DNA of 64,000 bases, taken from contig NIVC01001568.1 in assembly GCA_002269645.1 (NCBI GenBank), forward strand, positions 186,001 to 250,000, written 5' to 3'. The position numbers were made by a program, and so were the translations under genes. Below, in pieces: positions 530 through 54,807 of the stretch. Source of the DNA: Macrostomum lignano. Lineage: Eukaryota. The notes beneath the pieces are model-generated. The model ran no database searches, was not told where the DNA came from, and saw nothing but the letters and a program-made list of their open reading frames with translations. Within the stretch, counting starts at the first letter, position 1. Each line of letters begins with the position of its first letter.

Positions 530-1760
530 AGATCTAAGCCAAAACTAGGAATCTGACCCAAACATGGGGATCGCTGACCCAAACATGGGGATCTCTGACC
601 CAAACATGGGGATCTGACCCAAACATGGGGATCTGACCCAAACAGGGGATCTCTGACCCAAACATGGGGATCGCTGACAAAAAAACATGGGGATCTCTGA
701 CTCAACATGGGGATCTGAACCAAACATGGGGATCTCTGACCCAAACAGGGGATCTCTGACCGAAACATGGGGATCTGACCCAAACAGGGGATCTCTGACC
801 CAAACATGGGGATCGCTGACAAAAAAACATGGGGATCTCTGACCCAAACATGGGGATCTGACCCAAACATGGGGATCTGACCCAAACAGGGGATCTCTGA
901 CCCAAACATGGGGATCGCTGACAAAAAAACATGGGGATCTCTGACTCAACATGGGGATCTGAACCAAACATGGGGATCTCTGACCCAAACAGGGGATCTC
1001 TGACCGAAACATGGGGATCTGACCCAAACAGGGGATCTCTGACCCAAACATGGGGATCGCTGACAAAAAAACATGGGGATCTCTGACTCAACATGGGGAT
1101 CGCTGACCCAAACATGGGGATCTCTGACCCTAACCTGGGGATCTGACCCAAACCTGGGGATCTCTGACCCAAACATGGGGATCGCAGACCCAAACATGGG
1201 GATCGCTGACCCAAACATGGGGATCTCTGACCCAAACATGGGGATCGCTGACAAAAAAACATGGGGATCTCTGACTCAACATGGGGATCTGACCCAAACA
1301 TGGGGATCTCTGACCCAAACCTGGGGATCTCTGACCCATGCCTGGGGATCTGACCCAAAAATGGGGATCTCTGACCCAAACATGGGGATCTCTGACCCAA
1401 ACATGGGGATCGCTGACCCAAACCTGGGGATTTCTGACCCAAACCTGGGGATCTCTGACCCAAACATGGGGATCGCAGACCCAAACATGGGGATCGCTGA
1501 CCCAAACATGGGGATCTCTGACCCTAACCTGGGGATCTGACCCAAACATGGGGATCTGACCCAAACATGGGGATCGCTGACCCAAACATGGGGATCTCTG
1601 ACCCTAACCTGGGGATCTGACCCAAACATGAGGATCTCTGACCCAAACATGGGGATCTGACCCAAACATGGGGATCGCTGACCCAAACATGGGGATCGCT
1701 GACCCAAACATGGGGATCTGACCCAAAATGGGGATCTCTGACCTAAACTTGGGGATCCGA
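530..1760. repeat. Minisatellite, 19-21 bp unit (GACCCAAACATGGGGATCTCT-like)
   Basis: Tandem copies visible directly; explains the repetitive ORFs at 511-1891. Confidence 0.97.
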
Positions 1761-2050
1761 GACAAACATAGTGAATATAAGCCGCAAAACAAAAAGGCAT
1801 CAGAACGCGTGATAACAGCAGATATCTTAGCTTGAACTCCAACAAATTTTCCAGGGGCAACTGTACTCGTATGTAAGCAATATGCCGCCAACTAGTCGAA
1901 GAGCTGCTATATTTCTAAATTTCCAGATATGAGCACTGCTTTCAACTGAAAGATAAGCGTCAATGTTTCTGTGAAATTGTATACGAGTATATAAAATCAG
2001 GCAATTTTCTCAGTTGCCTACTACAAGTAGCACAGCGATTCATTGACTGG

Positions 2051-5000
2051 TCAATCAGGCAGCTCCAGAGGCTGGTCATACGGCAGCAGGTCCGGGTGGT
2101 AGACGTCCTCCGGGTATCCGCCCTCGGGCGCGTCCTCAGCGAAGTAGGTCGGCATCGGCGGCGGGTTGGCGTCCAGCGAGCGGCGAACGTCAAGCATCCA
2201 GGAGTCCATGATCTGCCGACAGGGGTAAACAAAAAGAGTAACTATGCCTTTTGTTTCAATGTAAAATTCCTCGTCATCTGAAAACTGAAAAGCCGGATAA
2301 ACGCAGGAGCCTGGGTGAACAGTGGCAGCAACTATCACTTGCACCAAGGGGTCGGCAAACTTTTTTACCTCCAGATAAAGAATCCAGCTCATGACTTGCG
2401 GGCTAGATGAGAGGGGAAAGGAGAGGGAATGCAAGATAAGAGATGAAAAGAGAGGGTAAAAGAGATGATAGTGAGAGAAAATATAGAAGATAAGAGGAGA
2501 GAAGAGGGCAGAGAGAGGAGAGGGGAGAGAGGATAGGGGAGAGGAGACTGAGTGAGGAGAGGAGAGAGAGGGAGAGAAGTGAGTGGAGAAAGGCGAGAGG
2601 AGAGGAGAGAAGAGAGAGGAGAAAAGATAGGGAGAGAAGAGAGAGAAGAGAGAGGAGAGAAGAGAGAGGAGAGAGGAGAGAAGAGAGAGGAGAGAGGAGA
2701 GAAGAGAGAGGAGAAAAGATAGGGAGAGAAGAGAGAGAGGAGAGAGGAGAGAAGAGAGAGGAGAGAGGAGAGAGGAGAGAGGAGAGAAGAGAGAGGAGAG
2801 AGGAGAGAAGAGAGAGGAGAGAGGAGAGAAGAGAGAGGAGAAAAGATAGGGAGATTAGAGAGAGGAGAGAGGAGAGAGGAGAGAAGAGAGAGGAGAAAAG
2901 AGAGGGAGAGAAGAGAGTGGAGAGAGGGAGAGGAGAGGGAGAAAGGCGAGGCGAGAGGGAAAAGAGAAGAGGGAAGGGGAGAGAGGAGAGGAGAGAAGAG
3001 AGAGAGAGGAGAGGGGAGAGAGGAGAGAAGAGAGAGAGGAGAGGAGAGGGGAGGGGAGAGGAAGAAATGTCTGGGTAAACAGCGGGAGCTTCCAGATTCG
3101 TTCGCCATCTAACCTGAGCAGCAGTTCTCACCTGACAATAGGAATGCGGCGGCCCGGGAGTGAAGCCTTTGATGAACAGCAGCCGGTGCTTGGTGTTGAC
3201 CCGCAGCACCGGCAGGGAGCGGGCCGCCCGGAACCGGTTGCCCATGACGCCCGGCATTCGCTTGCCGCGGTAGATCGGCCCGCCGCCGCCGGCCGCGCTG
3301 CCCATCTTGCGGTGGAACTTCGTGCTGCCGTGTGCCGCAGGGCCGCCTTCCATCAGGTGGCGCTCCATGACGCCCTAGGGGGTTCGAATAGTTCGATGCT
3401 CATGCTGACACTAGGGACTTGGAGGCTCGGGTTGATAGCATCACCTTCGATTCAGTCATACTGATCCCAGATTCAGTCAGACTGACCCTAGATTTAGTCA
3501 TTGTGACACTATATGCAGTCATACTGACCTTGGATTCAGCCATACTGGCCCTAGATTCAGTCAGACTCACCCTAGATTCAGTCAGACTCACCCTAGATTC
3601 AGTCATACTGACCTTAGATTGTCATAACCGACACCAGATGGTCATACTGACACTAGATTCAGTCATACTGACCTTAGATTGTCATAACCGACACCAGATG
3701 GTCATACTGACACTAGATTCAGTCATACTGACCTTAGATTGTCATAACCGACACCAGATGGTCATACTGACACTAGATTCGGTCATACTGACCTTAGATT
3801 GTCATAACCGACACCAGATGGTCATACTGACACTAGATTCAGTCATACTGACCTTAGATTGTCATAACCGACACCAGATGGTCATACTGACACTAGATTC
3901 GGTCATACTGACCTTAGATTGTCATAACCGACACCAGATGGTCATACTGACACTAGATTCGGTCATACTGACCTTAGATTGTCATAACCGACACCATATG
4001 GTCATACTGACACTAGATTCGGTCATACTGACCTTAGATTGTCATAACCGACACCAGATGGTCATACTGACACTAGATTCGGTCAGAGCGAACAAACTTG
4101 AGCCAAGCGACTCACCTGGAAGCCGCGATTGACTGTCCGGGCGACCACATCAACGCAGTCGCCCACGCGGAAGTGGTGCAGCCCCAGACAGGCCCCCGGC
4201 TGCAGAGCGGCATCCGGGCTGACCAGAAACCGGGAGATCTTCCGCATCGGCGGCAGGCCGGCTGCCTTGAAGATGCCGCACCACTGGGCGGTGAAGTTGG
4301 CGGGGTCGGCTGGCACGGCGCCAACAAGCTGGAGGCCCCAGCGCTGCTGGGTGAGCCAGCGGGGCAGTAAGCTTTGGTTCAGGCGGTAGGGCCGCATCTC
4401 ACGCAGGGAGGCGTAGCTGCTCAGGGGCAGTGAGCAAAGCAGTGAGAGCATTGAGAACCTCGTGTATCTGACTGACTATTGCCAACAATTATCTCTAAAT
4501 CCGTAAAAGAGAATCCCAGAAATCAATTAACTACAAGTGCAGACTGACAGCCTTAAACTCATCCATGTAATTCACAGAATCCTCAGATCGCAAACTTCGA
4601 GTACATTCCTCAAATCCCCAAAACTGGAATCCTCAAACCCCCAAAACTGGAATCCTCAAACCCCTAAAACTGTAATTCTCAAATCCCCAAAACTGGAATC
4701 CTCAAATCCCTAAAACTGGGATCCTCAAATCCCCAAAACTGGGATCCTCAAAACCCAAAAACTGGGATCCTCAAATCCCTAAAACTGGGATTCTCAAATC
4801 CCTAAAACTGGAATCCTCAAATCCCCAAACTGGGATTCTCAAATCCCCAAAATTGGGATCCTCAAATCCCAGAGTCGAATCTCAGAAACCGCAAGCTCCA
4901 ATCCCACAAGCCCAAAGCAGAAGGCCCAATTCAACAAGGGAACAGGCCCGGACAGCAGGCAGACTGAGTGCAGACTGACAGCCTTAAACTCATCCATGTA

Positions 5001-6253
5001 ATTCACAGAATCCTCAGATCGCAAACTTCGAGTACATTCCTCAAATCCCCAAAACTGGAATCCTCAAACCCCCAAAACTGGAATCCTCAAACCCCTAAAA
5101 CTGTAATTCTCAAATCCCCAAAACTGGAATCCTCAAATCCCTAAAACTGGGATCCTCAAATCCCCAAAACTGGGATCCTCAAAACCCAAAAACTGGGATC
5201 CTCAAATCCCTAAAACTGGGATTCTCAAATCCCTAAAACTGGAATCCTTAAATCCCCAAAACTGAAATCATTAAATCCCTAAAACTGGGATCCTCAAATC
5301 CCCAAAACTGGGATCCTCAAATCCCCAAAACTGGGATCCTCAAATCCCCAAAACTGGGATCCTCAAATCCCCAAAACTGGGATCCTCAAATCCCCAAACT
5401 GGGATTCTCAAATCCCTAAAACTGGAATCCTTAAATCCCTAAAACTGAAATCATTAAATCCCTAAAACTGGAATCCTTAAATCCCTAAAACTGAAATTAA
5501 ATCCCTAAAACTGGAATCCTTAAATCCCTAAAACTGGAATCATTAAATCCCTAAGACTGGGATCCTCAAATCCCCAAAACTAGGATCTTCAAATCCCTAA
5601 AACTGGGATCCTCAAATCCCCAAAACTAGGATCTTCAAATCCCCAAAACTGGAATCCTCAAATCCCCAAACTGGGATTCTCAAATCCCCAAAATTGGGAT
5701 CCTCAAATCCCAGAGTCGAATCTCAGAAACCGCAAGCTCCAATCCCACAAGCCCAAAGCAGAAGGCCCAATTCAACAAGGGAACAGGCCCGGACAGCAGG
5801 CAGAAGTGCAACTCACTTTCCCAGATCCTCAGGCGGCACCCAGCGCAGCACCCGCTGGTCGGGAATCTGCACGACAGTCGTGTGCACCTTCTGGCCGTTG
5901 CGGTACCACATCGGCAGGATGCCCAGCTTGATGCCGACCAGGCCGCAGCGCTGGCTCACCCGAGGAGTCCACAGCGGCCTCGCCGCAGGCGGCTCCTTCA
6001 ACGGGCTGGCGGCGGCGGCCGCCTCGCTGCTACTCGCAACGGCGTCTCGCACCCGCTGCAGGCGCCACTGCCGCAGCCAGTCGCGATTCTCCGGCGTCAG
6101 GTCGGCGTCTACCCGGCGCGCCTCGAACTGGCGAACCCAGTGCGGCTTCGGCTCGTCCTTCCACGGGTAGTCGATTTTGTGCAGCCGGGTGGCCTTGCTG
6201 TAGGACCGGCAGCTGGGGACCAGGCGGAGCCACGTATGGGGCGCCGTTGCCAT
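2051..6253 (-). CDS. MRPL3: Mitochondrial ribosomal protein uL3m; 4 exons: 6253-5817, 4416-4116, 3374-3132, 2212-2051 (380 aa)
   Basis: Motifs RCGLVGIKLGILPMWYRNGQKVHTTVVQ, HHFRVGDCVDVVARTVNRGFQ|GVMERH, AHGSTKFHRKMG, RMPGVMGN and PMPTYF match the uL3 family. GT/AG boundaries have compatible phases (2,0,0) and the ATG is in a GCCATGG context. The start codon is the least certain part. Confidence 0.93.
2345..3062. mobile_element. hAT-like terminal sequence (CAAGGGGTCGGCAAAC) followed by a ~650 bp GA-rich low-complexity tract, in MRPL3 intron 3
   Basis: Terminus resembles the ends of the MITE at 41997-42633. No second end or TSD is recognisable. Confidence 0.5.
3460..4085. repeat. Tandem repeat, 60 bp unit, in MRPL3 intron 2
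   Basis: Line-to-line identity at 3601-4080. Confidence 0.97.
4540..5803. repeat. Tandemly duplicated intronic block containing a ~21 bp minisatellite (CTCAAATCCCCAAAACTGGGATC), in MRPL3 intron 1
   Basis: Unique flanks GCAGACTGACAGCCTTAAAC... (about 4540 and 4970) and ...GGACAGCAGGCAGA (about 4963 and 5803) each occur twice. Confidence 0.92.
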
Positions 6254-6421
6254 GGCGACAATCAGCTGGCTGCTCAAAGCTGGTGCGGAGGCCGCTGAAA
6301 CCATGGGACAGCGCTTGAGAACTAAGCATGGCAATCAGGAAATTGAATATTGTTATCGGGTAAGGGATTTTAGCGTTTCGGGTCTTTTGAGACTTTGGAA
6401 CTTGTAGGACTTTAGCAAGAT

Positions 6422-6950
6422 TCAAGATAGAATGATGAGATTCAGGATGGGGATCCTGAGATCCAGGATGAAGATCATAAGATTCAGGTTGGGGATCATG
6501 AGATTCAGGATGGGGATCGTGAGATTCAGAATGGGGATCATAAGATTCAGGATGGGGATCATGAGATTCAGGATGGGGATCATGAGATTCAGGATGGGGA
6601 TCATGAGATTCAGGATGGGGATCGTGAGATTCAGAATGGGGATCATGAGATTCAGGATGGGGATCATGAGATTCAGGATGGGGATCATAAGATTTAGGAT
6701 GGGGATTATGAGATTCAGGATGGGGATCATAAGATTTAGGATGGGGATCATGAGATTCAGAATGGGGATCGTGAGATTCAGGATGGGGATCATGAGATTC
6801 AGAATGGGGATCGTGAGATTCAGGATGGGGATCATAAGATTCAGGATGGGGATTATGAGATTCAGAATGGGGATCGTGAGATTCAGGATGGGGATCATAA
6901 GCTTCAGGATGGGGATTATGAGATTCAGGATGGGGATTATGAGATTCAGC
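6422..6950. repeat. Minisatellite, 21 bp unit (ATGAGATTCAGGATGGGGATC), between MRPS6 and MRPL3
   Basis: Direct tandem copies. Confidence 0.97.
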
Positions 6951-7110
6951 TAGTAATTTTTAGAAAGAACTGTGGCTCAGACAAGAAAAAAACAAAAAAG
7001 CAGAACTGTACTAGAGAAAAATTAGATTGCAAAATTTCTCAAATATATTAACAGTATAATAAAAGCAAAACTCAAGCTATCCTACTCAAAGTAAGCTAAA
7101 CAGCGCCCAT

Positions 7111-7515
7111 TCAATAATGCCTATAGCCTCGCTTAACAGCATAGGCCTGTTCAAAGTTCGGCTTGTCCTTCTCGCCGAACTTGCACTGCTCGCCAGTTGA
7201 GCAGGGCCGCACCCAGTCGGCCTCGGTTTTGTCGCACACGTGGCCGCGAATCATGAAAGGGTCGAGGCGCTGCAGCGGCCGCAGGCGGTCCTTCACCCCT
7301 GGCGGCGACTCGAAGTGCACCAGGAAGTAGTGCCCGACCAGCGGCTTGTCGCCCACGGGAGCCCGCATGTTCAGTGGCAGCCGGCGCTCGCCCAAGTTGT
7401 CAACGGAGCGAATGACGGCGCCGCAGCGCAGCAGGTGGCCGAGGTTGCTGCGGAGGCCCGCCGCCACGTCTGCGCGACTGGCGCACTTCAGGATCAGCGT
7501 CTGCTCGAAACCCGG
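7111..7515 (-). CDS. MRPS6: Mitochondrial ribosomal protein bS6m; coding exon starts right after acceptor TTGCAG and lacks its own ATG
   Basis: PGFEQTLILK...RCGAVIRSVDNLGERRLP...GHYFLVHFESP...DPFMIRG aligns with the bS6 pattern (MPxYELxLILK...GAIVRxLENLGERxLPY...GxYFLVxF). An in-frame TGA lies 7 codons upstream of the acceptor. Confidence 0.88.
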   Translation of the reverse strand, partial: PGFEQTLILKCASRADVAAGLRSNLGHLLRCGAVIRSVDNLGERRLPLNMRAPVGDKPLVGHYFLVHFESPPGVKDRLRPLQRLDPFMIRGHVCDKTEADWVRPCSTGEQCKFGEKDKPNFEQAYAVKRGYRHY

Positions 7516-7534
7516 CTGCAATGGCGCGGAGTGA

Positions 7535-7912
7535 TTTCACTCTGATGTCTTGCAATAGGAGTGACTTCACCCTGATGGCTTGCAACTGGAGTGAATTCAC
7601 TCTGATGCTTGTAATTGAAGTGACTTCACTCTGATGCCTTGCAATCGGAGTGAATTCACCCTGATGACTTGCAATTGGAGTGACTTCACTCTAATCGAGT
7701 AGCTTTGGAATAGGAGTGACTTCACTCTAATCGAGTAGCTTTGGAATAGGAGTGACTTCACTCTAATCGAGTAGCTTTGGAATAGGAGTGACTTCACTCT
7801 AATCGAGTAGCTTTGGAATAGGAGTGACTTCACTCTAATCTAGTAGTGTTAGAACAGGAGTGACTTCACTCTGATCTAGTAGCTTTTGGATGGGAGTGAC
7901 TTCACTCTGATG
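7535..7912. repeat. Minisatellite, ~34-43 bp units (GGAGTGACTTCACTCT core), abutting the MRPS6 acceptor
   Basis: Direct tandem copies. Confidence 0.93.
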
Positions 7913-8549
7913 TGAAGACTAACATTAAAAAAGACAGTTAATAAATCACTCCAATAATAATTATTAACAAACGGGACTTACCCGTCAGCCACTTCCCTAC
8001 TTGCATCAAGCTAAAATAAATTAAAAATGAGGAACCTGATTGTAATGTTGACGCGAATAGCCGGGGTTTATTGACGATATTTTCAGAGCCAATCGGCTAA
8101 AAGTTACTAACAAATTTACAAAAAAAGTATTGAACCAGCGCATAAAAAATAAAACAACATGCGCACTTTCCAGCTAGCATTGAGACCAGATTATAGAGAC
8201 ACAAGAAAAGCTAAAAGTACTTTAGCCAAAGCGTGCAGGACAATAAAAATCAGCGGGCAGGAATAACAGTTATTATAAACTTGCTTTGTAGAAATTTTGT
8301 GATAAAAATAGTTACAAAATACGCATGCAAAAACCGGACGCTGGCAGTAGTAAAATAAGTGCTGTGACAGACGCAATTTCAAATTTCAGAATTTGTGCAA
8401 AAAGAGCAATAAAGAAATGCAATTAAAATTGTACAAGTTGACAAAGAGTTCGACAAACAACTTTGACTGAATAGTGAGTTGAGTACAGATAATTATTGTC
8501 AGCTTGATAGAAAATAAACAGATATGGTAAATACACTACATACTTTGGC

Positions 8550-8735
8550 CAATTGGGTCATTGAGTCACCTGATCACGCTATGTACTCTTAAGGATGATT
8601 GGGTCATTGAGTCACCTGATCATGCTATGTACTCTTGTGGGTAATTGGGCCATTGAGTCACCTGATCATGCTATGTACTCTTGTGGATGATTGGGTCATT
8701 GAGTCACCTGATCACGCAATGTACTCTTGTGGATA
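8550..8735. repeat. Short tandem repeat, ~45 bp unit (TTGGGTCATTGAGTCACCTGATC...), 4 copies, in the NF-YC 3' region
   Basis: Direct copies. Confidence 0.9.
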
Positions 8736-8766
8736 ATCTCAATGACCTTAAATGACCCCGCTCAAC

Positions 8767-10600
8767 TCAAAGGCCGGCAAAGCTGATTGGCACGGGGCCA
8801 GACAGACCCAGCTGGGCGATGTCCGGCTTTACATCCAGGGCCTCCTGCTGGACGTCGGAGGCGGCGGCCGCGGTGGCAAAGTGCAGCACAGGCTGCTGGT
8901 GCCCGCCGGCTGGATGGTCCTGGCTGGACACGAAGGCCAACTGCATTGGCTGCTGCTGGCCGCCAGGCATTTGAATAACATACTGCACCTGCTGCTGCGG
9001 CTGATGCGACGAGGTGACAACGGTGACAGCAGCTGGCTGAGCCGGAGTCTGGTGCTCCATCAGCTCGGCAGTGAGGGAGGCGTGGCCAGTCGCAGCGGCG
9101 GCAGACGCAGCAGAGACAGGCGCAGGTGCAGCAGCGGAAGCCGCCGCAGGCGCAGAGGCGGATCGGGCCGGGGTGGCGGGCAGCTGCTGCGGTTCCTCGC
9201 GCGGCACAATGTCGATGAGGAAGTCGAACTGGTCGGTGTCCTGGTCGTAGACGCTGGCGGAGATGTCGATGCGTTGCAAAGTTCGCCGGCGCTGCCGCTC
9301 CGTGTGCGACCAGGCGCGAAGGGTCAGCTCCTGCGGGATGCGGGCGGGATGGCAGCGATGGGAGCCGGTGCGGGACTCAGGGAAAGACAGCCACTTGCCG
9401 AGAGGCTTGGGGACAGCGTCAGACCTATCATTGGCGCGTCAGCACTGCATGGCAGTTTCGCTACAAATTGCTCAGTAGATTTCATCATTAATTGCTCAGA
9501 GAATGTACTTTAATTCTCCGAGGGGAAAACAGGCTGGGCTTATCAACTTAGAAATATCCCATGAAAGAACTGATTCATCCCAATATCCCAGCTGCCTGAT
9601 TTATCCCAACATCTCAGTTGCCTGATTCATCCCAATATCCCAGTTGCATGATTTATCCAATATCCCAGCTGCCTGATTCATCCCAATATCCCCTGATTTA
9701 TCCCAACATCCCAGTTGCCTGATTCATCCCAATATCCCCTGATTTATCCCAATATCCCAGTTGCCTGATTCATCCCAATATCCCCTGATTTATCCCAATA
9801 TCCCAGCTACCTGATTCATCCCAATATCCCCTGATTTATCCCAATATCCCAGTTGCCTGATTCATCCCAATATCCCCTGATTTATCCCAATATCCCAGCT
9901 ACCTGATTTATCCCAATATCCCAGCTACCTGATTTATCCCAATATCCCAGCTGCCTGATTTATCCCAATATCCCAGTTGCATGATTCATCCTAATACCCC
10001 AGCTGCCTGATTTATCCCAATATCCCATCTACCTGATTTATCCCAATATCGCATCTACCTGATTTATCCCAATATCCCAGTTGCCTGATTCATCCCAATA
10101 TCCCAGCTGCCTGATTTATCCCAATATCCCAGTTGCATGATTTATCCCAATACCCCAGCTGCCTGATTTATCCCAATATCCCATCTACCTGATTTATCCC
10201 AATATCCCAGCTGCCAGATTTATCCCAATATCTCATCTACCTGATTCATCCCAATATCCCAGCTGCCTGATTCATCCCAATATCCCAACTGCCAGATTCA
10301 TCCCAATATTCGATGCTCAAGGCACATAATTGATCCCTATTATCCCCAACTATAGCATACTGCCCCAACCTTGATGAGCAGCTCGGCAGCTTTGGAGAAC
10401 AGCAGAGGCGCCTCCGCGGCGATCATCATCCCGCGCACATCATCGTCCAGCTTCATGATCTTCTTGATTCGCGCCAGCGGCAGCTCAGAGTTCTTAAAGG
10501 CGGCCGTGTCGGCGGGCAGGGCGGCGATCTCCCTGGCCTCGTCCTGCATCAGCCTGGCGATGCGGGCGCCCAACAGCGAAATGGAATTGACGTTGGCCAT
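8767..10600 (-). CDS. NFYC: Nuclear transcription factor Y subunit C; 2 exons: 10600-10370 and 9330-8767; Ala/Gln-rich C-terminus
   Basis: Histone fold [36 protein letters not shown]|[35 protein letters not shown]; phase-0 GT/AG intron. Confidence 0.95.
9570..10310. repeat. Minisatellite, ~20-25 bp unit (CTGATTTATCCCAATATCCCAGCTGC), in the NF-YC intron
   Basis: Direct tandem copies. Confidence 0.96.
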
Positions 10601-10689
10601 GTGGCTCAAGCTGCTGGAACTGGAATGTGGGCACCTAAATTGATAAAGCATCTCAGAATACCAACCCATTCTTAACTATTACTCACATC

Positions 10690-10920
10690 CCAATCTCCCC
10701 TTTGAGTCCCTATCTCTCCTCAGAATCCCAATCTCCCCTTAGAGTGCCTATCTCCCCTCAGAATCCCAATCTCCCCTTAGAGTGCCTATCTCCCCTCAGA
10801 ATCCCAATCTCCCCTTAGAGTGCCTATCTCCCCTCAGAATCCCAATCTCCCCTTAGAGTGCTTATCTCCCCTCAGAATCCCAATCTCACCTTGGAGTTTT
10901 AATTTCACCTCAGAGTCCCA
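10690..10920. repeat. Tandem repeat, 37 bp unit (ATCTCCCCTCAGAATCCCAATCTCCCCTTAGAGTGCCT)
   Basis: Direct copies between RPS12 and NF-YC. Confidence 0.92.
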
Positions 10921-11512
10921 ACTGGCGCTATTTACAATCCATGCCTTCTGGAGTCATATCGGGTGCATCAATAACTCTTTTTGGTAAGACAGCCACAGCA
11001 ACTACGTGAATCCCCTTAGCTATCCTTAGCAACCATCTGTAAATTCTTATAATAATCTCATGATTCATCTGAATCCTTGGTTAATCTAATAGTACTAATA
11101 ATCTGGAGCTACCACCTGGATACTCGCATTTCATTAACCCATAGCAACTATTCCCAAAACAACAGAACACAAATAGTTTCCAAAAACGGCCATCTCGCAG
11201 GACAAGCTCGAACTGGCAGGCCAATGCGCCGGGGTTGCCACCGCATTTCACTTTCCACATCTCTGCGCTCTGTCTGCAGCGGATCGGCACGCAAGTTAGT
11301 AAAGAGTCGCCTATCTGTTCTCCTTTAATATTCAGACAAATATTACAAGCCATCGCCATGATAACGAAATCATTGATTAATAATTATTAATAGCACGCGC
11401 AATATCTGATATAATTTAACGATAACAAATCAATCCCGAATTCGGATATCAAATAAGCTGCGCTGATGTGGCTTCCAGTTTCGCCCTTTGTCCAGCCTCC
11501 GTTCGCCTCAGA

Positions 11513-13972
11513 TTAATCCGTCATCTTCTGCAGGAACTCCATCGCCTGACTGGCATGGCTGGAGCCCAGGTCCTGTTGGAGACGGGTGGGTAATGTTATT
11601 CTTAAAGTACATTTACAACTGTCCCGTGAGCGCCTGATAAAGCATAAATACAAAGGGATTATAAGTCAGACCTATCATTCAAGCTTCACCGCTGGCGGAA
11701 CTATGACCGGACAGCTTTGCTCAAAATTGCTCAAAATTTATCATCACTTCGGAATAAAGATTTGAGACGACATGCGAGATCGGGAAGTCGAGACAAGGGA
11801 TCGGGATTCATTCTTGATAGGGATCCTGAGGTGAGATTGGGACTCTAATGTGAGAATGGGACTCTGAGGTGAGATTGGGACTCTGAGGTGAGATTGAGAT
11901 TCTGAGGTGAGATTGGGACTCTGATGTGAGAATGGGACTCTGAGGTGAGATTGAGACTCTGAGGTGAGATTGGGACTCTGAGGTGAGATTGGGACTCTGA
12001 GGTGAGATTGAGATTCTGAGGTGAGATTGGGACTCTGAGGTGAGATTGAGACTCTGAGGTGAGATTGGGACTCTGAGGTGAGATTGGGACTCTGAGGTGA
12101 GATTGAGATTCTGACGTCAGATTTGGATTCTGAGGTGAGATTTGGATTCTGAGGGGAGATTGGGCTTCTGAGGGAAGATTGGGACTCTAAGGTTAGATTG
12201 GGATTCTGAGGTGAGATTGGGACTCTGAGGTGAGATTGAGATTGAGATTCTGAGGTGAGATTTAGATTCTGAGGGGAGATTGGGATTCTGATGGGAGATT
12301 GGGACTCTGAGATGAGATTGGGACTCTAAGGTGAGATTGAGATTCTGAGGTGAGATTAAGATTCTGAGGTGAGATTGGGACTCTAAGGTGAGATTGAGAT
12401 TCTGAGGTGAGATTTAGATTCTGAGGGGAGATTGGGATTCTGATGGGAGATTGGGACTCTGAGGTGAGATTGGGACTCTGAGATGAGATTGGGACTCTAA
12501 GGTGAGATTGAGATTCTGAGGTGAGATCGAGATTCTGAGGTGAGATTGGGACTCTAAGGTGAGATTGAGATTCTGAGGTGAGATTTAGATTCTGAGGGGA
12601 GATTGGGATTCTGAGGGGAGATTGGGATTCTGATGGGAGATTGGGACTCTGAGGTGAGATTGGGACTCTAAGGTGAGATTGAGATTCTGAGGTGAGATTG
12701 AGATTCTGAGGTGAGATTGGGACTCTAAGGTGAGATTGAGATTCTGAGGTGAGATTTAGATTCTGAGGGGAGATTGGGATTCTGATGGGAGATTGGGACT
12801 CTGAGGTGAGATTGAGATTCTGAGGTGAGATTGGGACTCTGAGGTGAGATTGAGATTCTGAGGTGAGATTTAGATTCTGAGGGGAGTTTGGGATTCTGAT
12901 GGGAGATTGGGACTCTGAGGTGAGATTGGGACTCTGAGATGAGATTGGGACTCTAAGGTGAGATTGAGATTCTGAGGTGAGATTGAGATTCTGAGGTGAG
13001 ATTGGGACTCTAAGGTAAGATTGAGATTCTGAGGTGAGATTTAGATTCTGAGGGGAGATTGGGATTCTGATGGGAGATTGGGACTCTGAGGTGAGATTGG
13101 GACTCTGAGGTGAGATTGGGACTCTGAGATGAGATTGGGACTCTAAGGTGAGATTGAGATTCTGAGGTGAGATTGAGATTCTGAGGTGAGATTGGGACTC
13201 TAAGGTGAGATTGAGATTCTGAGGTGAGATTTAGATTCTGAGGGGAGATTGGGATTCTGATGGGAGATTGGGACTCTGAGGTGAGATTGGGACTCTGAGG
13301 TGAGATTGGGACTCTGAGATGAGATTGGGACTCTAAGGTGAGATTGAGATTCTGAGGTGAGATTGAGATTCTGAGGTGAGATTTAGATTCTGAGGTGAGA
13401 TTGGGACTCTGGTTGAGATTGCTATCGTGGAGTGAGATTGGGTTTCTGATGTGTGATTGGGATTCTGGCATCTTGATGGGGATTCTGAGGTGAGATTGGG
13501 ATTCTGACATTCTTGATGGGTATTGAAGTAAAGTGAGACTGGGATAGTTAGATAGAAATCTAAGAGATTCCGGCTTGGGAATCTAATAGCTGAGATGCAG
13601 AATCGCAGAGTTACATTCCAGCCTCACCTTGACAACCACGCAGGAGCACTTGACAACTTTGCGCGGCTTGCCCTCTTTGTCAATCTTGCACAGGCCGGCC
13701 CACTCGCCCAGCTGCTTGGCCTGGTCCACCCGCACCAGCCGGACGCCGTGCTCGGAGCAGAGCGCCTCCACCAGCTTGCTGTAAGCGGCCTCGTCGCAGT
13801 CGTTGGCCAGAATGCACAGCAGGGCGTTGCGCTTCTCCAACGCTTTGGTGGCCTCGTGGAGGCCGCGCGACAAACCGTCGTGCGCCATGGAAGTTTTGAG
13901 CACCTCCTGAACGGCTGTCTCCAAGGTGAGCTCGCCGCCAGCAGCGGCATCAACATCGCCAGCGTCGCTCAT
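11513..13972 (-). CDS. RPS12: 40S ribosomal protein eS12; 2 exons: 13972-13628 and 11572-11513
   Basis: [79 protein letters not shown]|DLG... is the eS12 signature; phase-0 intron AAG|GTGAGG...CAG|GAC. Confidence 0.97.
11820..13510. repeat. Long minisatellite, 19 bp unit (GAGATTGGGACTCTGAGGT), in the RPS12 intron
   Basis: Direct tandem copies with higher-order blocks. Confidence 0.97.
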
Positions 13973-14432
13973 TATTATTGGACTTTGAGTGGATTGATGA
14001 GCAGGCCTGCGCCTCCCGGCTGCAATTATGCGTTTATTAATCAATCTAGTGTAGGGGTGTCCGCGCAATGTTTATTTTCAATCTCCTCTATCAATTTCTT
14101 AGCCAGGAGTTGTGTACCGTCTTGGGAAACTTTCTACTTGTAATCGAATGGTGCAAGTTTCATAAAGATTGGTTGAGCAGTTTTTTTCTAAAATAAATCA
14201 CACAAATAGAAACAAATAGTAAACAACTCATTTTTAGTATATAGGAAGGAAATAAAACTAGCAATCTGCGCCCCCATTGTGGGGCAACAAAGAATAAAAT
14301 ATATATTTTTTAATAAACTATTAATAGCTTTTAACCTTGTACAGTTAACACTGCTAGTTTCTTATGAAAACATGATGTTTAAAGCAAACAAGCATCAGCC
14401 CTGAAAACCAGCTATCTAGCCTAAGATATCAG

Positions 14433-15394
14433 CAGTGATGGGCACCACTAAATTTATTGTTAGCGCCACTAATTAGCGCTGTCACAAACTGATAGAAGAA
14501 AAAAATCAGCGATTGCTAATAGCAAGCGCTATTTCTACTTTGAATTTAGCGCAATCAGAGCCACTAATAGTAAATTTGCTAATTAATGAATACATTTAAT
14601 ATAAACTTCTGTTTCACACATATTTATGCATTTTTTCACATTTTTAACTCACATGTTGTAAATGAAAAAAGCTAATAAAGCTATTGCTAATAATTTGTTT
14701 TTATTGTCAATCCTGATAAAAAATCCTCAAACCACTGAACTGTCAGAGCAATAGTTGGTAGAAAGAGTTCCTAAATTACAATGCTGTTTGCCTTGAAAAC
14801 ATCAAGGGCCTGTGCTACTGGAGCTTACACTCAAGAAGGAACCTTATACTCAAGAAGGAAAGCGAGATCATCAGCTTGAAACAGTGGTACAGGATTTATT
14901 AACCCCACCATCACCCTAATGATATAGCCTGTCATTTTGCATCATCACTTAGAATATCAACTGAGTTGAATGTTGAATTCTTTGATTAAATTATTAAATT
15001 AAATTAAATTAATCAACAACTTTTTGCTAACAAATTAAAAGTAGTAAGAAAACTTTTAAAACTTAATGACAAAAACAAGATTAATTGAACTATGAACTTT
15101 GTTCTTTGAACTTCTAAGAAAATTAGAAACATTAGAGATTTAGTATAGGAAGATTATATAATATTTTACTTATTACTCAAATAGGGTCTCATTTTAAGTA
15201 TTAAGCAGTCATTAACTGTCTAGTTTTATAGCAAAAAATGAATTTAGCGCAATTAGCGATTTTCAGAAAATATTAGTGGCACTTTGATAGCACACACTAA
15301 TTGGAATTTCAATTTAGCGGAATTAGCAGTGCTAACAAAACATTAGTGGCACTTTAGCAGAATTCAAATTTAGTGGTGCTAGTGCCCATCACTT
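14433..15394. mobile_element. Non-autonomous hAT-type MITE (962 bp)
   Basis: Inverted termini CAGTGATGGGCAC...GTGCCCATCACTT with inner ACCACTAAATTT / AAATTTAGTGGT; 8-bp TSD GATATCAG / GATATTAG; repeated subterminal TTAGCG motifs. Confidence 0.8.
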
Positions 15395-15821
15395 GATATT
15401 AGCATCTAATTTAAACCCTATAATGCTAAAAAAACTTATTGCACATACATATGCTAAATACGGAAATACAATAAAAACACTAAATTAATGAACTGAGAAA
15501 AATATAAAATAAAACATAAAACAATAAAGACCTGAATTTGTATAGCCATGATTTCCAATACAGGATCCTACACTAATCTGAGGCTATTTGGATTTTGGAG
15601 CTTTAGCAGGTTTAAATTTAATTTTTTAAATCAACAAGAAGCACTTAAACAAATAAAGTTAAAGATTTTGTGAATGCTAGGATAGTGGACTCAGTATATT
15701 TGTTGTTAAACTTTACTTGCAAAGAATCTATTTATACCATATTAGTTTTGCTTTCATATTATCTTTTATGCAATATACTTATATCTAGACAACTCTTTGC
15801 AACATTTTAGTGCTTAGTTGA

Positions 15822-16110
15822 CATACATGCGCAACAGTCGGCCGAGTTGGCCGACTGATTTGGTGGCCAACCAAGGAAGTCACAAAAATACCCACCCAAA
15901 AAATTACCAAAGTAGTAGTACTAAGTAGCTGATGAGGCATTTTGGCTTAATAAGACAGTCATAGTTACTCCTGCTGTTTACCCAAAGTTGCGTTAATTTT
16001 GCTTTAGGGTTTTTTTACATGTAAGTTGCATTTTTGGCCAAAAACTACGTCGCATTTTTGTTAAAACTAAGTCGCATGGCCGACCGAATTTTGGAGGTTG
16101 CGCATGTATA
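15822..16110. mobile_element. MITE (289 bp) with 8-bp TSD (hAT or P superfamily)
   Basis: Termini CATACATGCGCAAC...GTTGCGCATGTATA; exact TSD TTAGTTGA at 15814-15821 and 16111-16118. Confidence 0.8.
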
Positions 16111-16891
16111 TTAGTTGATCAGTTTTGTAACAAATTCATTTGTATCATATTATCAGGATTGACCAAGCTAGCCAAGTATTTTACATATATGCCTAGCCTT
16201 GCTACCCAATTTTTATTAACTTCCTTAGTTGTTTTAGCCTAAATCTGCCTTATAAATTTCAGTGGCTAATGTACATTATGGCAAAACTAATAAGCAAGCT
16301 TTTTACAACTATAAGCTTGGCTTTTTAACTTATCAAAGTTATCTCAGGTGCCTTTATTCTTATAAAATAGCTTATATACTCTTCACAACTTATTGAACTA
16401 AAAATAGAAAGCTGTTTTGTTAAGTCTATGCCTATGTTACTACTGAGTGGCTCATTTAGTTATTTTAGCATCTGTGGGCCTAAGTAAAAAGTTGGCAATC
16501 TCCTAGTTTATTGTGTTGAATAAATTTTTAAGTTTTTCCTAAATTGTTTAGCTAATTAGCCAACTCTGTAATGGTTAAAAGGCCTAGAGCACTAACTACC
16601 ATAATCTTTAAAGCTAACTGCCAAGCTTATCAATATCAATATCAACCTATAGGAGCCCACACTACTGATAGCCAACAATATGAGCTATTCACTAGTTGGC
16701 CATGTATACTAATATGGCTATATAGGGATAGAATATGGCATGAACAAGGACATGATGGATGATGGTTCTTATCCTAAACTGCAATAAATAGATGTTGCTA
16801 CCTATTATCTAGCAGTATGTCTTTCAATGGCCTTGTTCTTCAATCAATGGCAGGTATAAAAAGGCCTACAATGGCCTGCCAAATAGTATCT

Positions 16892-17528
16892 ACATTTTGG
16901 TACCCAGTATTTTGGTGCCCTAGTTTGCTTTTTGTTGCCTAAATTATAGGCCTCAATTAGAATTAGAAACAAAATAGAAATTTAGCCCTAAATTATTGCT
17001 TGATTGTTTGATAATTGCTTTGCAATCAAAAATAAAATCATTGCTTCTCATTTTGTTGAGCTAATCTATTTTTTTATTTTTTGAAAGTTTTTTTTCATAA
17101 AATTTTTGTCCTAATTTGTCAAAAAATCATAACATAATTACATGTTAGATGTTACTTAAGAAAACAAATCAATATTAAAAGAGATTTGTCACATTTCATA
17201 ACTTTGATCAAAACTATATCTATAATATTATGTATAATGTAGCATCATTAGTAGTTAGTTATATTATGTTACCTAAATCTTCTTAGCACATATTTAAAGT
17301 GCAGCCTTGTATGCATAGATAAATAGCAAATGCAATTAGGCCTAAACATTAATGGATATTTCAAAATCAAAGAAACATGTCAGTTCAACAAAATGGATAC
17401 TGCTTTTAATCATTAAGAAAAAATTTTTGTAGAAAATTTATTAGAATGTTAGAAGACTATTTTATTATTTAGATATCATAAACTTCATAAACTAAGGCAC
17501 CAAAAAGCAATCTGGGGTACCAAAATGT
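16892..17528. mobile_element. Degenerate inverted-repeat element (probable MITE)
   Basis: ACATTTTGGTACCCAG..TTTTGGTGCCCTAG is mirrored by CTAAGGCACCAAAA..CTGGGGTACCAAAATGT. No TSD seen. Confidence 0.45.
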
Positions 17529-17782
17529 CAGGAACCAAAAAGCATGGAAACCTGCTAAATGCTCAAACCATGCCACCATGAACTAGAAACTATAGCCTAT
17601 ATTTTGTGGACCCAAATGACCTAACAATCTACACTAACACTTAGAGGTCTTAGGCTCATATCAAGGAAAAGTTTAGGGCCATGCATGGCACCTTAGATGT
17701 TCTCTTTGAGCGCCACCTCAACAAATATCTACGGCTTTGTCTGTTTCTAGAAGAGGTCTTCAAAAACTTCTTGTACCCAGTA

Positions 17783-18328
17783 GGAATCCAGTCCATTTCG
17801 GCGACAAACCATTTCAGTGACACCCATTTCGGCGACAGGTCAATTCAGCAACAACCATTTTGGCAACAATTCTTAAATAGGATTTTGAATGTTTTTTATC
17901 TCATAGAACTTTATCTTATCTCATATCTCATAGTCCTCTACAAGCTTTTTTCTTGTCATTTCTTAAAACATTAATTTCTTATTAGGCCCCCCTATAATTC
18001 ATTTGTTTTACTGTACTTTTGGTATCTAAACTAAATGTCCATCAGTGTCCAGGTTTTATAGGCCTACTGTCTAAAGTGTTGATTAGGTTTTATATTAAAA
18101 ATTTTAACATAGTTTTAACAAAGCTTTTAAAGTTTAATGTAAAGTTTTACACTATAATTTGTTTTAACAACATTTAAACAAAGGGTGTTAATTTGTATAA
18201 GTTCTGAAATTTTTTGTTGCTATGAGATAAAAAAACATTAAAAGTCCTATTTAAGAATTGTCGCCAAATTGACCTGTCACTAAAATGGGTGTCGCCAAAA
18301 TGGTTTGTTGCCAAAATGGACAGGTACC
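17783..18328. mobile_element. MITE (546 bp) with ~90-100 bp internally repetitive TIRs and GG...CC ends
   Basis: Left GTCCATTTCGGCGACAAACC...AATTCTTAAATAGGA is the reverse complement of right TCCTATTTAAGAATT...GCCAAAATGGAC; 4-bp flanking repeat AGTA. Confidence 0.8.
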
Positions 18329-20387
18329 AGTAGCTCACTATTTTTATTATTAATTGATTTAACACTTACCCGACACTTATAATATGCCTGCTGCTACTCA
18401 TATTCCACCTGGTATGACCATCTCTGTGTGAAAAAAAACTGAAAAAATTAACATAGCAAACTAGGAGATAGACAAAAAGTTAGGCCTATGGCTATATCAA
18501 AATAGCCTAGTAGGCCTAAAGTAAAAAACATTTTTGCAAAAATGATCACAGTGACAGTGTCTAGTAAGAAAAATGCAACAGAAAAAAATTAAGATACAAA
18601 ATTATTAATTGTTCCCTCCCTTTTTAATTTTGTTTTCGTTTTTGTTGGTGGCAATTTTTGTGGCTATTCAACTTTTGCTCTTTGGCTTTGGCTCTTAGTC
18701 TAGAGCAAACTAATAATCCATATTAGATCATAATCCATATTAAGCTTAAGCTTAATAGGCCTAACTGTCACTGACAACCACAGATTTAGTTAGTTGTAGG
18801 TTTATGATATGTTGTAGCATCTTATCAGTAATGTTGAAACTAACCACGCGCACGTCGACTGGTAATTATGTAAACGTAACTATTTAATTTAACAAGTCTA
18901 TCCTCAGCTCAAGATATAATTTTTGTACGTGCGATCCGATGATGGTCAGCATTTTGCTTTTTTTAAAAATTTAATCAATTTAACAAAATAAATGTTTGGC
19001 TCTCTTAATTTAAAAAAAAAATGTACTTAACTAGATTTTTTGAAAGAGAAATTAATTAAATAAATTATTCACAGTTGTTTTTATATTAACTAATTACCAA
19101 TTGCCGATTACATTTATTCATTTTTTAATTGAACCACCACAAATGCCTACCTAAAGCTTTGCTTTAAATGCCCTTTTTCTGGTTACTTCTTTTTTAAAAA
19201 TATATTTTATTTTTAAATGCCTAATATTGCCAGCAATCCTTATATACTGGTATATTATTTATTATTGATAGGTTAATATACTTGAACTACCTATTTGAAT
19301 CATGTTTTGAATGAATCGCTTTCTATCAAGTTCATACAGTACCTGTCATACAGTATCCCTACTTAATACCTTGTCATTTGTTGTTAGTCGTTGTTAGTCG
19401 TTAAAGTTCGATAATACCGTTAAAAAAATTTACAGATGCGTTTTCAATCATAGTTTTTTTACAAATTATTACATGTAAATACACTGCCTTTTATTGGCCA
19501 AACAGGCTCCCAGCCTGAGCCTAACTTACCAACTTACTTACACGCGTTTCAGGTTTACTGATGTAAACTTTTAATACTTTTTCGCAATTCGAAAATCAGC
19601 GGTTCCACGCACGCGTGCCGGGTATTCTGATGTTACATGTATATCCAATAAAAAAGTGTGCAGGTGGTCCCTACATGTAAATAATTTATGCGAATGATGC
19701 TAAAAAATATCCTAGCTAATTTTTTTTACACTAATTCACGACGGACGACAGCCTACAGTTTCGTGAGGCAGATTTAAGTCTTTGCACAGTCTACGGTGAC
19801 AGTGTGCACCATTGCTTGTGCACCAGTCCATCTTATAAGAAATCATTATGTTAAGCATGCAAATTAAGAGCCAGACTGGCGCTTTGGCGCGGTCACAGGC
19901 AGTTAAGCGGCTAAAGTAAGCTAAATATTAGTCTAACGATCTCCGAAAGTGATCGCAATGCATCTACATCATCGCTATCCGTCGACGCGTTAACACATTT
20001 AGTGCCAAAAGCGTGCAGTTATGTGTACTTTTACATGTACTTCTGGGAATTTGGTAATGAAATAGTACATTTAGTAGTGTATGAAGGCTCGCCAGCGCAA
20101 GAACCCTCTGCAAAAGTCCTCTCTGTCCCTGCATGGCCAATGCGACCTTAGCCCCAGTCCCTAAAGCAAGTTGAAGCAAGTTGAAGCAACATGTTTTGTA
20201 AGTTATATCAAAATAAGAGCTTTGTATCTGCTTCCAATAAAAAGCTATCACACCATTTTAAATTGAAAAAAGTGAAAAGTTCCTATCTCGCTAGTGCATT
20301 TTTCCGTGAAAATCAGCCTTTAATAAATTTTCCAAGAAACGAAGTGTCCCGTCCTTCTTCTTCTAGTGGTCCTTGATTTCAAAGAGC

Positions 20388-21472: not shown

Positions 21473-21484
21473 TGGCATGTATAA

Positions 21485-42762: not shown

Positions 42763-54807
<12,045 letters not shown>

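What the first reader, a model, noticed from the sequence alone, without database searches (positions are those of the whole stretch)
2051..13972. Candidate trans-spliced operon: RPS12 > NF-YC > MRPS6 > MRPL3
Seen: four minus-strand genes with stop-to-start gaps of about 910, 1250 and 860 bp. Poly(A) signals follow RPS12 (ATTAAA near 11329) and NF-YC (AATAAA near 8072), each with a T-rich tract. Each start has a 3' splice-like AG just upstream and no obvious TATA. Established: flatworms resolve polycistronic transcripts by SL trans-splicing, and animal operons are enriched for mitochondrial and translation genes. Inference: one promoter upstream of RPS12 co-transcribes cytosolic and mitochondrial ribosomal proteins with a CCAAT-factor subunit.
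Basis: partly seen in the sequence, partly recalled or inferred. Interest (0 to 1): 0.7.

Follow-up and report, generated by a model that had tools for sequence, protein, structure and literature searches.

The report
Ordinary flatworm trans-spliced four-gene operon
Four neighbouring same-strand genes of the flatworm Macrostomum lignano (ribosomal protein S12, NF-YC, and mitochondrial ribosomal proteins S6 and L3) all start at spliced-leader acceptor sites and fit the published definition of an operon, a gene arrangement already reported for about 15% of this animal's genes.

Summary
The window is Macrostomum lignano scaffold NIVC01001568.1 (assembly Mlig_3_7). On the minus strand lie eS12, NF-YC, bS6m and uL3m, with stop-to-start gaps of 912, 1251 and 857 bp.

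In GenBank all four CDSs are 5'-partial. Each begins 0-2 nt after an AG (TTGCAG, TTCCAG, TTGCAG, TTTGAG), even though each reading frame stays open further upstream. That is what the published pipeline produces when it cuts transcripts at spliced-leader (SL) read peaks.

MRPS6 has no genomic ATG. The M. lignano SL ends in ATG, and joining it at 7516|7515 gives MPGFEQTLILK, which aligns from Met1-Pro2 with mammalian bS6m.

After removing minisatellites, the stop-to-acceptor distances are 658, 686 and 323 bp. All are below the published 1-kb operon threshold. Two paralogous scaffolds keep the same gene order.

Locus tags give NF-YC, MRPS6 and MRPL3 one transcriptional-unit prefix (Mlig000932). 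RPS12 always has a different prefix. Co-transcription of the last three genes therefore has indirect support, while a single promoter upstream of RPS12 is unproven.

Operons of this kind are already described genome-wide in this species, so novelty and interest are low.

The parts
14020..14025 (-). RPS12 trans-splice acceptor TTGCAG; first exon base is 14019.
   Evidence: The GenBank 5'-partial CDS (PAA66331.1, 149 aa) starts at 14017, 2 nt after the AG, although the ORF stays open 18 codons further upstream. The acceptor is conserved in all three paralogous copies.
11513..13972 (-). RPS12 (eS12) coding region. Exon 1 CDS is 13972..13628 and exon 2 CDS is 11572..11513. The intron (13627..11573) is filled by a 19-bp minisatellite at 11816-13507.
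11324..11329 (-). ATTAAA, a possible RPS12 poly(A) signal, 184 nt after the stop.
   Evidence: It is variable among copies (ATTAAA, AATAAA, GTTAAA), and such hexamers occur at a background of about 1 per kb.
10621..11512 (-). Spacer 1, from the RPS12 stop to the NF-YC acceptor. It contains a 19/38-bp tandem repeat at 10687-10921.
   Evidence: Length is 893 bp including the G of the acceptor, and 658 bp after removing the repeat.
10620..10625 (-). NF-YC trans-splice acceptor TTCCAG; first exon base is 10619.
   Evidence: The GenBank CDS PAA66330.1 (Mlig000932g1, 270 aa, partial) starts at 10618. The acceptor is conserved in L001 and mutated to TTCATG in the third copy.
8767..10600 (-). NF-YC coding region. 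Exon 1 is 10600..10370 and exon 2 is 9330..8767. The intron carries a 26-bp minisatellite at 9570-10309.
8067..8072 (-). AATAAA, the likely NF-YC poly(A) signal, followed by a T-rich tract.
   Evidence: It is the only canonical hexamer in spacer 2, in each of the three copies.
7517..8766 (-). Spacer 2, from the NF-YC stop to the MRPS6 acceptor. Tandem repeats lie at 8552-8734 (46 bp unit) and 7527-7908 (30/36 bp units).
   Evidence: Length is 1251 bp, and 686 bp after removing repeats. About 150 bp of unique sequence lies between the AATAAA and the acceptor.
7516..7521 (-). MRPS6 trans-splice acceptor TTGCAG, in phase 0 with the CDS.
7111..7515 (-). MRPS6 (bS6m), single exon, with no genomic start codon. 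There is an in-frame TGA at 7539..7537 and no ATG before the conserved N-terminus.
   Evidence: SL ATG + CCG GGT TTC gives MPGFEQTLILK, which aligns from residue 1 with mammalian bS6m MPRYELALILK. GenBank annotates it as 'partial', 134 aa.
6274..7110 (-). Spacer 3, from the MRPS6 stop to the MRPL3 acceptor. It contains a 21-bp minisatellite at 6435-6949.
   Evidence: Length is 838 bp, and 323 bp after removing the repeat. It has no AATAAA or ATTAAA; the only variant is AATATA at 7049.
6273..6300 (-). MRPL3 acceptors: TTTGAG (6278..6273, used in the GenBank model of this scaffold) and TTTCAG (6300..6295, used in the model of paralog L001).
2051..6253 (-). MRPL3 (uL3m) coding region, four exons: 6253..5817, 4416..4116, 3374..3132, 2212..2051. 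Each intron holds a different tandem-repeat array.

Best explanation
This is an ordinary spliced-leader operon of Macrostomum lignano.

Proposed mechanism. RNA polymerase II reads through a same-strand gene cluster. Each cistron's 3' end is cleaved and polyadenylated. The 35-nt SL (…TTGCATG) is trans-spliced onto the acceptor just upstream of each coding region: TTGCAG|14019, TTCCAG|10619, TTGCAG|7515, and TTTGAG|6272 or TTTCAG|6294.

For MRPS6 the SL also supplies the initiator AUG. For the other three genes the SL AUG is out of frame and opens a short or overlapping upstream ORF.

The spacers look long only because each carries a minisatellite array.

Shown:
- gene identities and gene models;
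- acceptors exactly at the annotated transcript 5' ends;
- MRPS6's need for the SL AUG;
- repeat-adjusted spacing below the published threshold;
- conservation of gene order in three paralogous scaffolds.

Inferred:
- actual SL addition, deduced from the published annotation rather than from reads;
- polycistronic transcription of NF-YC, MRPS6 and MRPL3, deduced from a shared transcriptional-unit prefix.

Open: whether RPS12 is the first cistron or a separate unit. I put this at about even odds.
For: 1. Organism and locus. The MRPS6 hit is BOX15_Mlig000932g3. L002 is identical to the window, from NIVC01001568.1.

2. Transcript 5' ends. All four GenBank CDSs are 5'-partial and begin 2, 1, 0 and 1 nt after an AG, while the ORFs remain open 18, 19, 7 and 21 codons further upstream. 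The annotated transcripts therefore start at those AGs. The annotation pipeline (TBONE) cuts transcriptional units at SL-read peaks (PMC5730564). The same pattern is seen in paralog L001.

3. Acceptor motif. Three of the four hexamers match the published acceptor motif [T/C]TNCAG (PMC8629364).

4. MRPS6 start codon. The SL sequence ends in ATG. MRPS6 has no genomic ATG, and the SL-joined product aligns from Met1-Pro2 with solved bS6m. The spacer contains no ATG|GT donor, and the window contains no SL copy.

5. Spacing. Stop-to-acceptor distances are 893, 1251 and 838 bp, or 658, 686 and 323 bp after removing tandem repeats. The published operon threshold is a repeat-adjusted 1 kb, with trans-spliced downstream genes.

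6. Transcriptional-unit naming. Genes of one unit share a prefix (Suppl. Fig. 5a). NF-YC is Mlig000932g1 and g5, MRPS6 is Mlig000932g3 and MRPL3 is Mlig000932g4.

7. Genomic context. The same four-gene order occurs on NIVC01000201.1 and NIVC01000957.1. No other gene is called within 10 kb on either side.

8. Promoter motifs. There is no TATAWAW in the spacers.
Against: - No SL-bearing read, 3'-end read, capped-TSS signal or spacer-spanning RNA was seen directly.
- RPS12 has a different transcriptional-unit prefix in every copy: Mlig006428 here and Mlig005267 in L001. MRPL3 of this scaffold is Mlig007843g1. The published transcript assembly therefore did not bridge all four genes on this scaffold.
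- About 60% of SL-trans-spliced genes in this species are not in operons, so trans-splicing alone does not prove co-transcription.
- Spacer 1 keeps about 450 bp of unique sequence after the putative poly(A) signal, well above the ~100-bp mode reported for operon spacers.
- A cytosolic ribosomal-protein gene is normally expressed far above an NF-Y subunit.
- In the third copy the NF-YC-to-MRPS6 spacer is 7.7 kb.
- The cluster is not conserved around MRPL3 in Fasciola or Hymenolepis.
Confidence: 0.65

Rival explanations
1. There are two units. RPS12 is a monocistronic, SL-trans-spliced gene with its own promoter and terminator. A separate promoter in spacer 1 drives a three-gene operon NF-YC > MRPS6 > MRPL3. 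This overlaps the best explanation and contradicts only the reader's single-promoter claim.
For: - The RPS12 transcriptional-unit prefix differs from that of the other genes in all three copies, while NF-YC, MRPS6 and MRPL3 share Mlig000932.
- Spacer 1 has the largest unique remainder: 658 bp from the stop, and about 450 bp after the ATTAAA.
- A large difference in expression level between a cytosolic ribosomal-protein gene and NF-YC is expected (general knowledge, not tested here).
Against: - The authors note that transcriptional units split at repeat-rich operon spacers, and spacer 1 carries a repeat array.
- The distance is still under the published 1-kb threshold.
- Spacer 1 has no TATA or CCAAT motif.
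- Its unique part is no better conserved between paralogs (about 92%) than other non-coding sequence.
Confidence: 0.35
2. The four genes are independent. Each has its own promoter in the upstream spacer and each is trans-spliced as a monocistronic pre-mRNA, so the adjacency is only a dense gene cluster.
For: - Most SL-trans-spliced M. lignano genes are not in operons.
- The raw spacers are 0.84-1.25 kb, and 3.2-7.7 kb in the paralogs, long compared with the ~100-bp mode.
- MRPL3 of this scaffold has a different transcriptional-unit prefix (Mlig007843) from NF-YC.
Against: - In L001, MRPS6 and MRPL3 are consecutive genes g3 and g4 of one prefix, which NF-YC also carries.
- After removing repeats, only about 150-300 bp of unique sequence separates the likely 3' ends from the next acceptor in spacers 2 and 3.
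- The excess length in the paralogs is minisatellite plus one antisense LINE insertion.
- There are no TATA-like motifs in the spacers.
Confidence: 0.15
3. The cluster is a chance juxtaposition or an assembly artefact.
For: None beyond the known heavy duplication of the Mlig_3_7 assembly.
Against: The same order, orientation and exon structure occur on three separate scaffolds that are 85-92% identical in non-coding DNA.
Confidence: 0.02

Closest known systems
Macrostomum lignano SL operons (Wudarski et al. 2017, PMC5730564; Ustyantsev & Berezikov 2021, PMC8629364)
   Same: - The same single 35-nt SL ending in ATG.
- The same acceptor motif, YTNCAG.
- Same-strand neighbouring genes.
- Repeat-inflated spacers that fall under 1 kb once repeats are subtracted.
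- Conserved housekeeping genes.
   Different: - Nothing of kind.
- It has four genes, whereas 75% of the reported operons have two genes and 18% have three.
- The first spacer lies well above the ~100-bp mode.
Caenorhabditis elegans operons (Blumenthal & Gleason 2003, as cited in PMC8629364)
   Same: - Polycistronic pre-mRNA resolved by 3'-end formation plus SL trans-splicing.
- Enrichment for mitochondrial and gene-expression machinery genes (established knowledge).
   Different: - C. elegans uses a specialised SL2 for downstream genes and has ~100-nt intercistronic regions.
- M. lignano has one SL, and here the spacers are hundreds of bp plus minisatellites.
SL-donated initiator AUG in flatworms (Cheng et al. 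2006, as cited in PMC12582326)
   Same: The SL ends in AUG, and for MRPS6 that AUG is in frame and replaces a missing genomic start codon.
   Different: - It applies to only one of the four genes.
- In the other three the SL AUG is out of frame.
- GenBank does not recognise the SL AUG and labels the MRPS6 CDS 'partial'.
Cestode MRPL3-histone H2A pair (chimeric gene models in Taenia and Rodentolepis; adjacent genes in Hymenolepis)
   Same: uL3m sits in a tight same-strand pair that gene predictors sometimes fuse, which points to polycistronic transcription.
   Different: The partner gene is different (H2A, lying downstream), and no S6, NF-YC or S12 gene is nearby. The M. lignano cluster is therefore not an ancestral flatworm operon.

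Membership tests
M. lignano SL operon (operational definition of PMC8629364) | Immediately adjacent genes in the same orientation, with no opposite-strand gene between them. | tested here: met
   The called genes on NIVC01001568.1 are S12, NF-YC, S6 and L3, all on one strand with nothing between them. ORF survey.
M. lignano SL operon (operational definition of PMC8629364) | The downstream gene of each pair is SL trans-spliced (acceptor at the mRNA 5' end). | tested here: met
   This is indirect. The annotated 5'-partial CDSs start 0-2 nt after AG acceptors while the ORFs continue upstream. MRPS6 needs the SL AUG.
M. lignano SL operon (operational definition of PMC8629364) | SL-bearing RNA-seq reads map at those acceptors. 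| not testable with these tools
   No read data are available here. Logan holds no M. lignano transcript for these proteins.
M. lignano SL operon (operational definition of PMC8629364) | Repeat-adjusted intergenic distance below 1000 bp. | tested here: met
   Measured from the stop codon rather than the poly(A) site, the upper bounds are 658, 686 and 323 bp.
Operon in the strict sense (one promoter, one polycistronic pre-mRNA) | A precursor RNA spans the spacers. | tested here: inconclusive
   NF-YC, MRPS6 and MRPL3 share the transcriptional-unit prefix Mlig000932 across copies. RPS12 (Mlig006428, Mlig005267) and this scaffold's MRPL3 (Mlig007843) do not.
Operon in the strict sense (one promoter, one polycistronic pre-mRNA) | No independent transcription start site in the spacers. 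| not testable with these tools
   Only motif scans were possible. They found no TATAWAW and no CCAAT near the acceptors, apart from repeat-borne CCAAT in spacer 2.
C. elegans-type SL2 operon | A specialised downstream SL and intercistronic regions of about 100 nt. | tested here: not met
   Only one SL is known in M. lignano. The raw spacers are 0.84-1.25 kb.
SL-donated start codon | The SL ends in AUG; the acceptor is in phase 0 with the CDS; there is no in-frame genomic ATG before the conserved N-terminus; and the N-terminus aligns with orthologues from Met1. | tested here: met
   There is a TGA at 7539 and no ATG before 7515. The alignment with bS6m starts at residues 1-2. No ATG|GT donor occurs in the spacer.

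The most novel reading that the evidence does not exclude
A single promoter upstream of RPS12 couples a cytosolic ribosomal protein, two mitoribosomal proteins and the CCAAT-factor subunit NF-YC in one pre-mRNA, giving hard-wired co-regulation of cytosolic and mitochondrial translation capacity. In addition, MRPS6 has become obligately dependent on trans-splicing for its start codon. In that case, loss of the acceptor AG, as seen in the third paralog, would silence the gene while its ORF stays intact.
Probability: 0.35. Interest if true: 0.3.

Novelty: new member of a known kind. Interest (0 to 1): 0.2.

Why it matters
It matters little beyond annotation. The locus is a clean worked example of three points already made for this genome:
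- M. lignano operon spacers are inflated by minisatellites.
- SL acceptors define the 5' ends of genes.
- The SL's terminal AUG can be the only start codon of a gene.

MRPS6 is filed as 'partial' in GenBank, but with the SL AUG it is complete.

The locus could serve as a convenient test case, because M. lignano is transgenic-capable. It could show whether a highly expressed ribosomal-protein gene can head an operon of low-expression genes, or whether such clusters hide internal promoters.

Tried and rejected
I went through MRPS6 and cluster look-ups instead.
- Searching the papers and supplements for Mlig006428, Mlig007843, Mlig000932 and Mlig005267 found nothing. The 2021 operon paper has no supplement held.
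- The supplements of the parasitic-flatworm operon paper list none of these genes.
- The window has no Rfam family, tRNA or SL RNA gene. This also rules out a local SL-like exon.
An acceptor at about 8011 with the GGTAAGT donor at 7981 would make a 29-nt mini-exon, but neither its internal ATG nor an SL ATG would be in frame with MRPS6 (and my own reading). Rejected.
- A Logan mRNA contig of uL3m from a related species (L006, SRR30276804, 80% identity) carries no SL at its 5' end. This is uninformative, because assemblers usually break at the shared SL.
- Synteny was checked around MRPL3 in Fasciola hepatica and Hymenolepis diminuta. There is no S6, NF-YC or S12 neighbour.
- The poly(A) hexamers are at background density, so I did not count them as evidence.


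Full report
**What is there.** The region is eukaryotic and full of minisatellites. Reading the minus strand gives four genes.
- RPS12: CDS 13972..13628 + 11572..11513, 134 aa.
- NF-YC: 10600..10370 + 9330..8767, 264 aa.
- MRPS6: 7515..7111, one exon.
- MRPL3: 6253..5817, 4416..4116, 3374..3132, 2212..2051, 380 aa.

All introns use GT-AG. The identities are firm. Against solved structures the scores are eS12 6e-49, NF-YC 1e-31, mitochondrial bS6m 2.5e-12 and mitochondrial uL3m 4e-50. Pfam agrees.

**Where it comes from.** The MRPS6 search returned a single relative, 'BOX15_Mlig000932g3, partial [Macrostomum lignano]'. Exact look-ups and contig retrieval show that the window is scaffold NIVC01001568.1 of assembly GCA_002269645.1 (Mlig_3_7). 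Locus L002 is base-for-base identical to the window. Two further scaffolds, NIVC01000201.1 (L001) and NIVC01000957.1 (L003/L005), carry the same four genes in the same order. Their non-coding identity to the window is 85-92%. This fits the known partial genome duplication of this strain and excludes an assembly accident. On the window's scaffold no other gene is called within 10 kb upstream of RPS12 or 10 kb downstream of MRPL3. An 8-kb stretch of 32% GC lies directly upstream.

**Trans-splicing.** The M. lignano spliced leader is CGGTCTCTTACTGCGAAGACTCAATTTATTGCATG, and the acceptor motif enriched at trans-splice sites is [T/C]TNCAG (PMC8629364). The published annotation cut assembled 'transcriptional units' into genes at peaks of SL-containing reads and at poly(A) reads (PMC5730564).

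On this scaffold all four GenBank CDSs are 5'-partial. They start at 14017, 10618, 7515 and 6271. These positions are 2, 1, 0 and 1 nt after the AG of TTGCAG, TTCCAG, TTGCAG and TTTGAG. Yet each reading frame stays open for a further 18, 19, 7 and 21 codons upstream. A 5'-partial ORF is extended to the first in-frame codon of its transcript, so the annotated transcripts must begin right after those AGs. This is what cutting at SL sites produces. The same holds in paralog L001 for RPS12, MRPS6 and MRPL3, where MRPL3 starts after TTTCAG, 22 nt further upstream. I did not see the reads themselves, so this step is an inference from the annotation.

**MRPS6 and the SL start codon.** One piece of evidence needs no annotation. 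MRPS6 has no genomic start codon. Upstream of 7515 the frame runs through the acceptor to a TGA at 7539, with no ATG. The first internal ATG is at codon 51. Joining the SL at 7516|7515 puts its terminal ATG in frame and gives MPGFEQTLILK. This aligns from Met1-Pro2 with mammalian bS6m, MPRYELALILK. Spacer 2 has no ATG|GT donor. The window contains no SL copy. All flatworm SLs end in AUG, and its use as an initiator is a known possibility (PMC12582326; PMC10468722). For RPS12, NF-YC and MRPL3 the SL AUG is out of frame and opens a 15-codon, 42-codon or longer upstream ORF.

**Is it an operon?** The published operational rule for this species has three parts: adjacent same-strand genes, a trans-spliced downstream gene, and an intergenic distance under 1 kb after subtracting repeats. 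By that rule 10,458 genes (about 15%) are in operons. Of those operons, 75% have two genes and 18% have three.

Here the stop-to-acceptor distances are 893, 1251 and 838 bp. Removing tandem repeats leaves 658, 686 and 323 bp. These are upper bounds, because they include the 3' UTRs. With the conserved AATAAA at 8072, only about 150 bp of unique sequence separates the NF-YC 3' end from the MRPS6 acceptor. The cluster therefore qualifies as a four-gene operon under the rule.

The longer spacers in the paralogs are explained. The 3.2 kb in L001 and the 7.7 kb in L005 consist of expanded minisatellites plus, in L005, an antisense non-LTR retrotransposon. This is the repeat inflation the authors describe.

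**Evidence on co-transcription itself.** In the annotation, genes cut from one transcriptional unit share its name prefix (Suppl. Fig. 5a of PMC5730564). The tags are as follows.
- NF-YC is Mlig000932g1 here and Mlig000932g5 on the third scaffold.
- MRPS6 and MRPL3 of L001 are Mlig000932g3 and Mlig000932g4.
- RPS12 is Mlig006428g2 here and Mlig005267g1 in L001.
- This scaffold's MRPL3 is Mlig007843g1.

So assembled RNA linked NF-YC, MRPS6 and MRPL3 in at least one copy, but never linked RPS12. The authors warn that transcriptional units break in repeat-rich operon spacers, so the break before NF-YC does not settle the question. Still, spacer 1 keeps the most unique sequence, and a cytosolic ribosomal-protein gene is expected to be much more highly expressed than NF-YC. 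I rate RPS12's membership at roughly even odds.

ATTAAA (11329) and AATAAA (8072) exist. Such hexamers occur about once per kb on this strand, so they add little. The AATAAA is kept in all three copies, whereas the ATTAAA varies. No canonical signal follows MRPS6. The absence of TATA-like motifs in the spacers is confirmed but is weak evidence, because M. lignano promoter motifs are not defined.

**Comparison and novelty.** The locus works like a C. elegans operon but is not of that type, because it has one SL and long spacers. It is a member of the already described M. lignano operon class. The cluster is not ancient. MRPL3 stands alone in Fasciola, and in Hymenolepis it is followed by histone H2A. 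No paper names this particular cluster. The finding is correct in substance and ordinary in kind.

Noticed in passing
L003 ~12750-12758 and L005 ~8225-8233 (scaffold NIVC01000957.1), equivalent to window 10625-10620 and 7521-7516: The third paralogous copy has lost two trans-splice acceptors by point changes: NF-YC TTCCAG>TTCATG and MRPS6 TTGCAG>TTGCTG. All of its coding sequences remain intact. Without that AG, MRPS6 has no way to acquire its start codon, so this copy may be silenced with an intact ORF, or the change may be a consensus error. GenBank still annotates both genes at the same positions, probably because trimmed SL reads map to several copies.
   Followed up: partly
L005 ~2650-7450: An antisense non-LTR retrotransposon (endonuclease + reverse transcriptase, plus a downstream RNase H-like ORF) is inserted in the NF-YC-to-MRPS6 spacer of the third copy, stretching it to 7.7 kb.
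   Followed up: partly
window 552-1768, 2493-3058, 3449-4087, 4607-5711, 6435-6949, 7527-7908, 8552-8734, 9570-10309, 10687-10921, 11816-13507: Every intron and every spacer of the cluster carries its own minisatellite array. Units range from 5/7-bp purine-rich repeats in the last MRPL3 intron to 60 bp, with up to 89 copies. Each array has a different unit, and copy number differs greatly among the three paralogs.
   Followed up: partly
window 14019-13973, 10619-10601, 6272-6254: For RPS12, NF-YC and MRPL3 the SL's AUG is out of frame. In RPS12 it opens a 15-codon upstream ORF ending 2 nt before the real ATG. In NF-YC it opens a 42-codon upstream ORF, and in MRPL3 one of more than 50 codons; both overlap the real ATG. 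This may affect translation but was not tested.
   Followed up: no
window ~10684 and 7981: There are 5'-splice-site-like sequences inside the spacers: GTGAGT 63 nt upstream of the NF-YC acceptor (L001 has GGTAAG nearby instead) and GGTAAGT about 90 nt after the NF-YC AATAAA. Their role is unknown.
   Followed up: no
window 14100-21500: An 8-kb AT-rich stretch (about 32% GC against about 50% elsewhere) with no called gene lies directly upstream of RPS12. It is collinear with the third copy, while only short blocks are shared with L001. L001 also has an insertion of about 330 bp at -70 relative to the RPS12 acceptor.
   Followed up: partly
window 40774-41835 (+) and 52209-52901 (-): There is an intact-looking Mos1/mariner-type transposase ORF (353 aa; HTH_48, HTH_32, weak Transposase_1) and a second, degraded copy.
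   Followed up: partly
window 28903-32560 (-) and 59980-63992 (-): Two other genes lie in the window. One is a transferrin-receptor/PSMA-like gene (PA and TFR_dimer domains). The other is a DEAH11-like helicase with KH and RING domains that runs off the window end.
   Followed up: partly
P0032, P0035; L008 10001-16747: In cestodes MRPL3 is followed 0.7 kb downstream by histone H2A on the same strand. In Taenia asiatica and Rodentolepis nana the two are fused into one gene model, which suggests a separate MRPL3-H2A operon in that lineage.
   Followed up: no
P0020 (UniRef A0A1I8FNQ…): M. lignano also has a second uL3m-like protein, only 63% identical to this one (361 aa, no Pfam hit on record). 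It may be a diverged paralog or a poor gene model.
   Followed up: no
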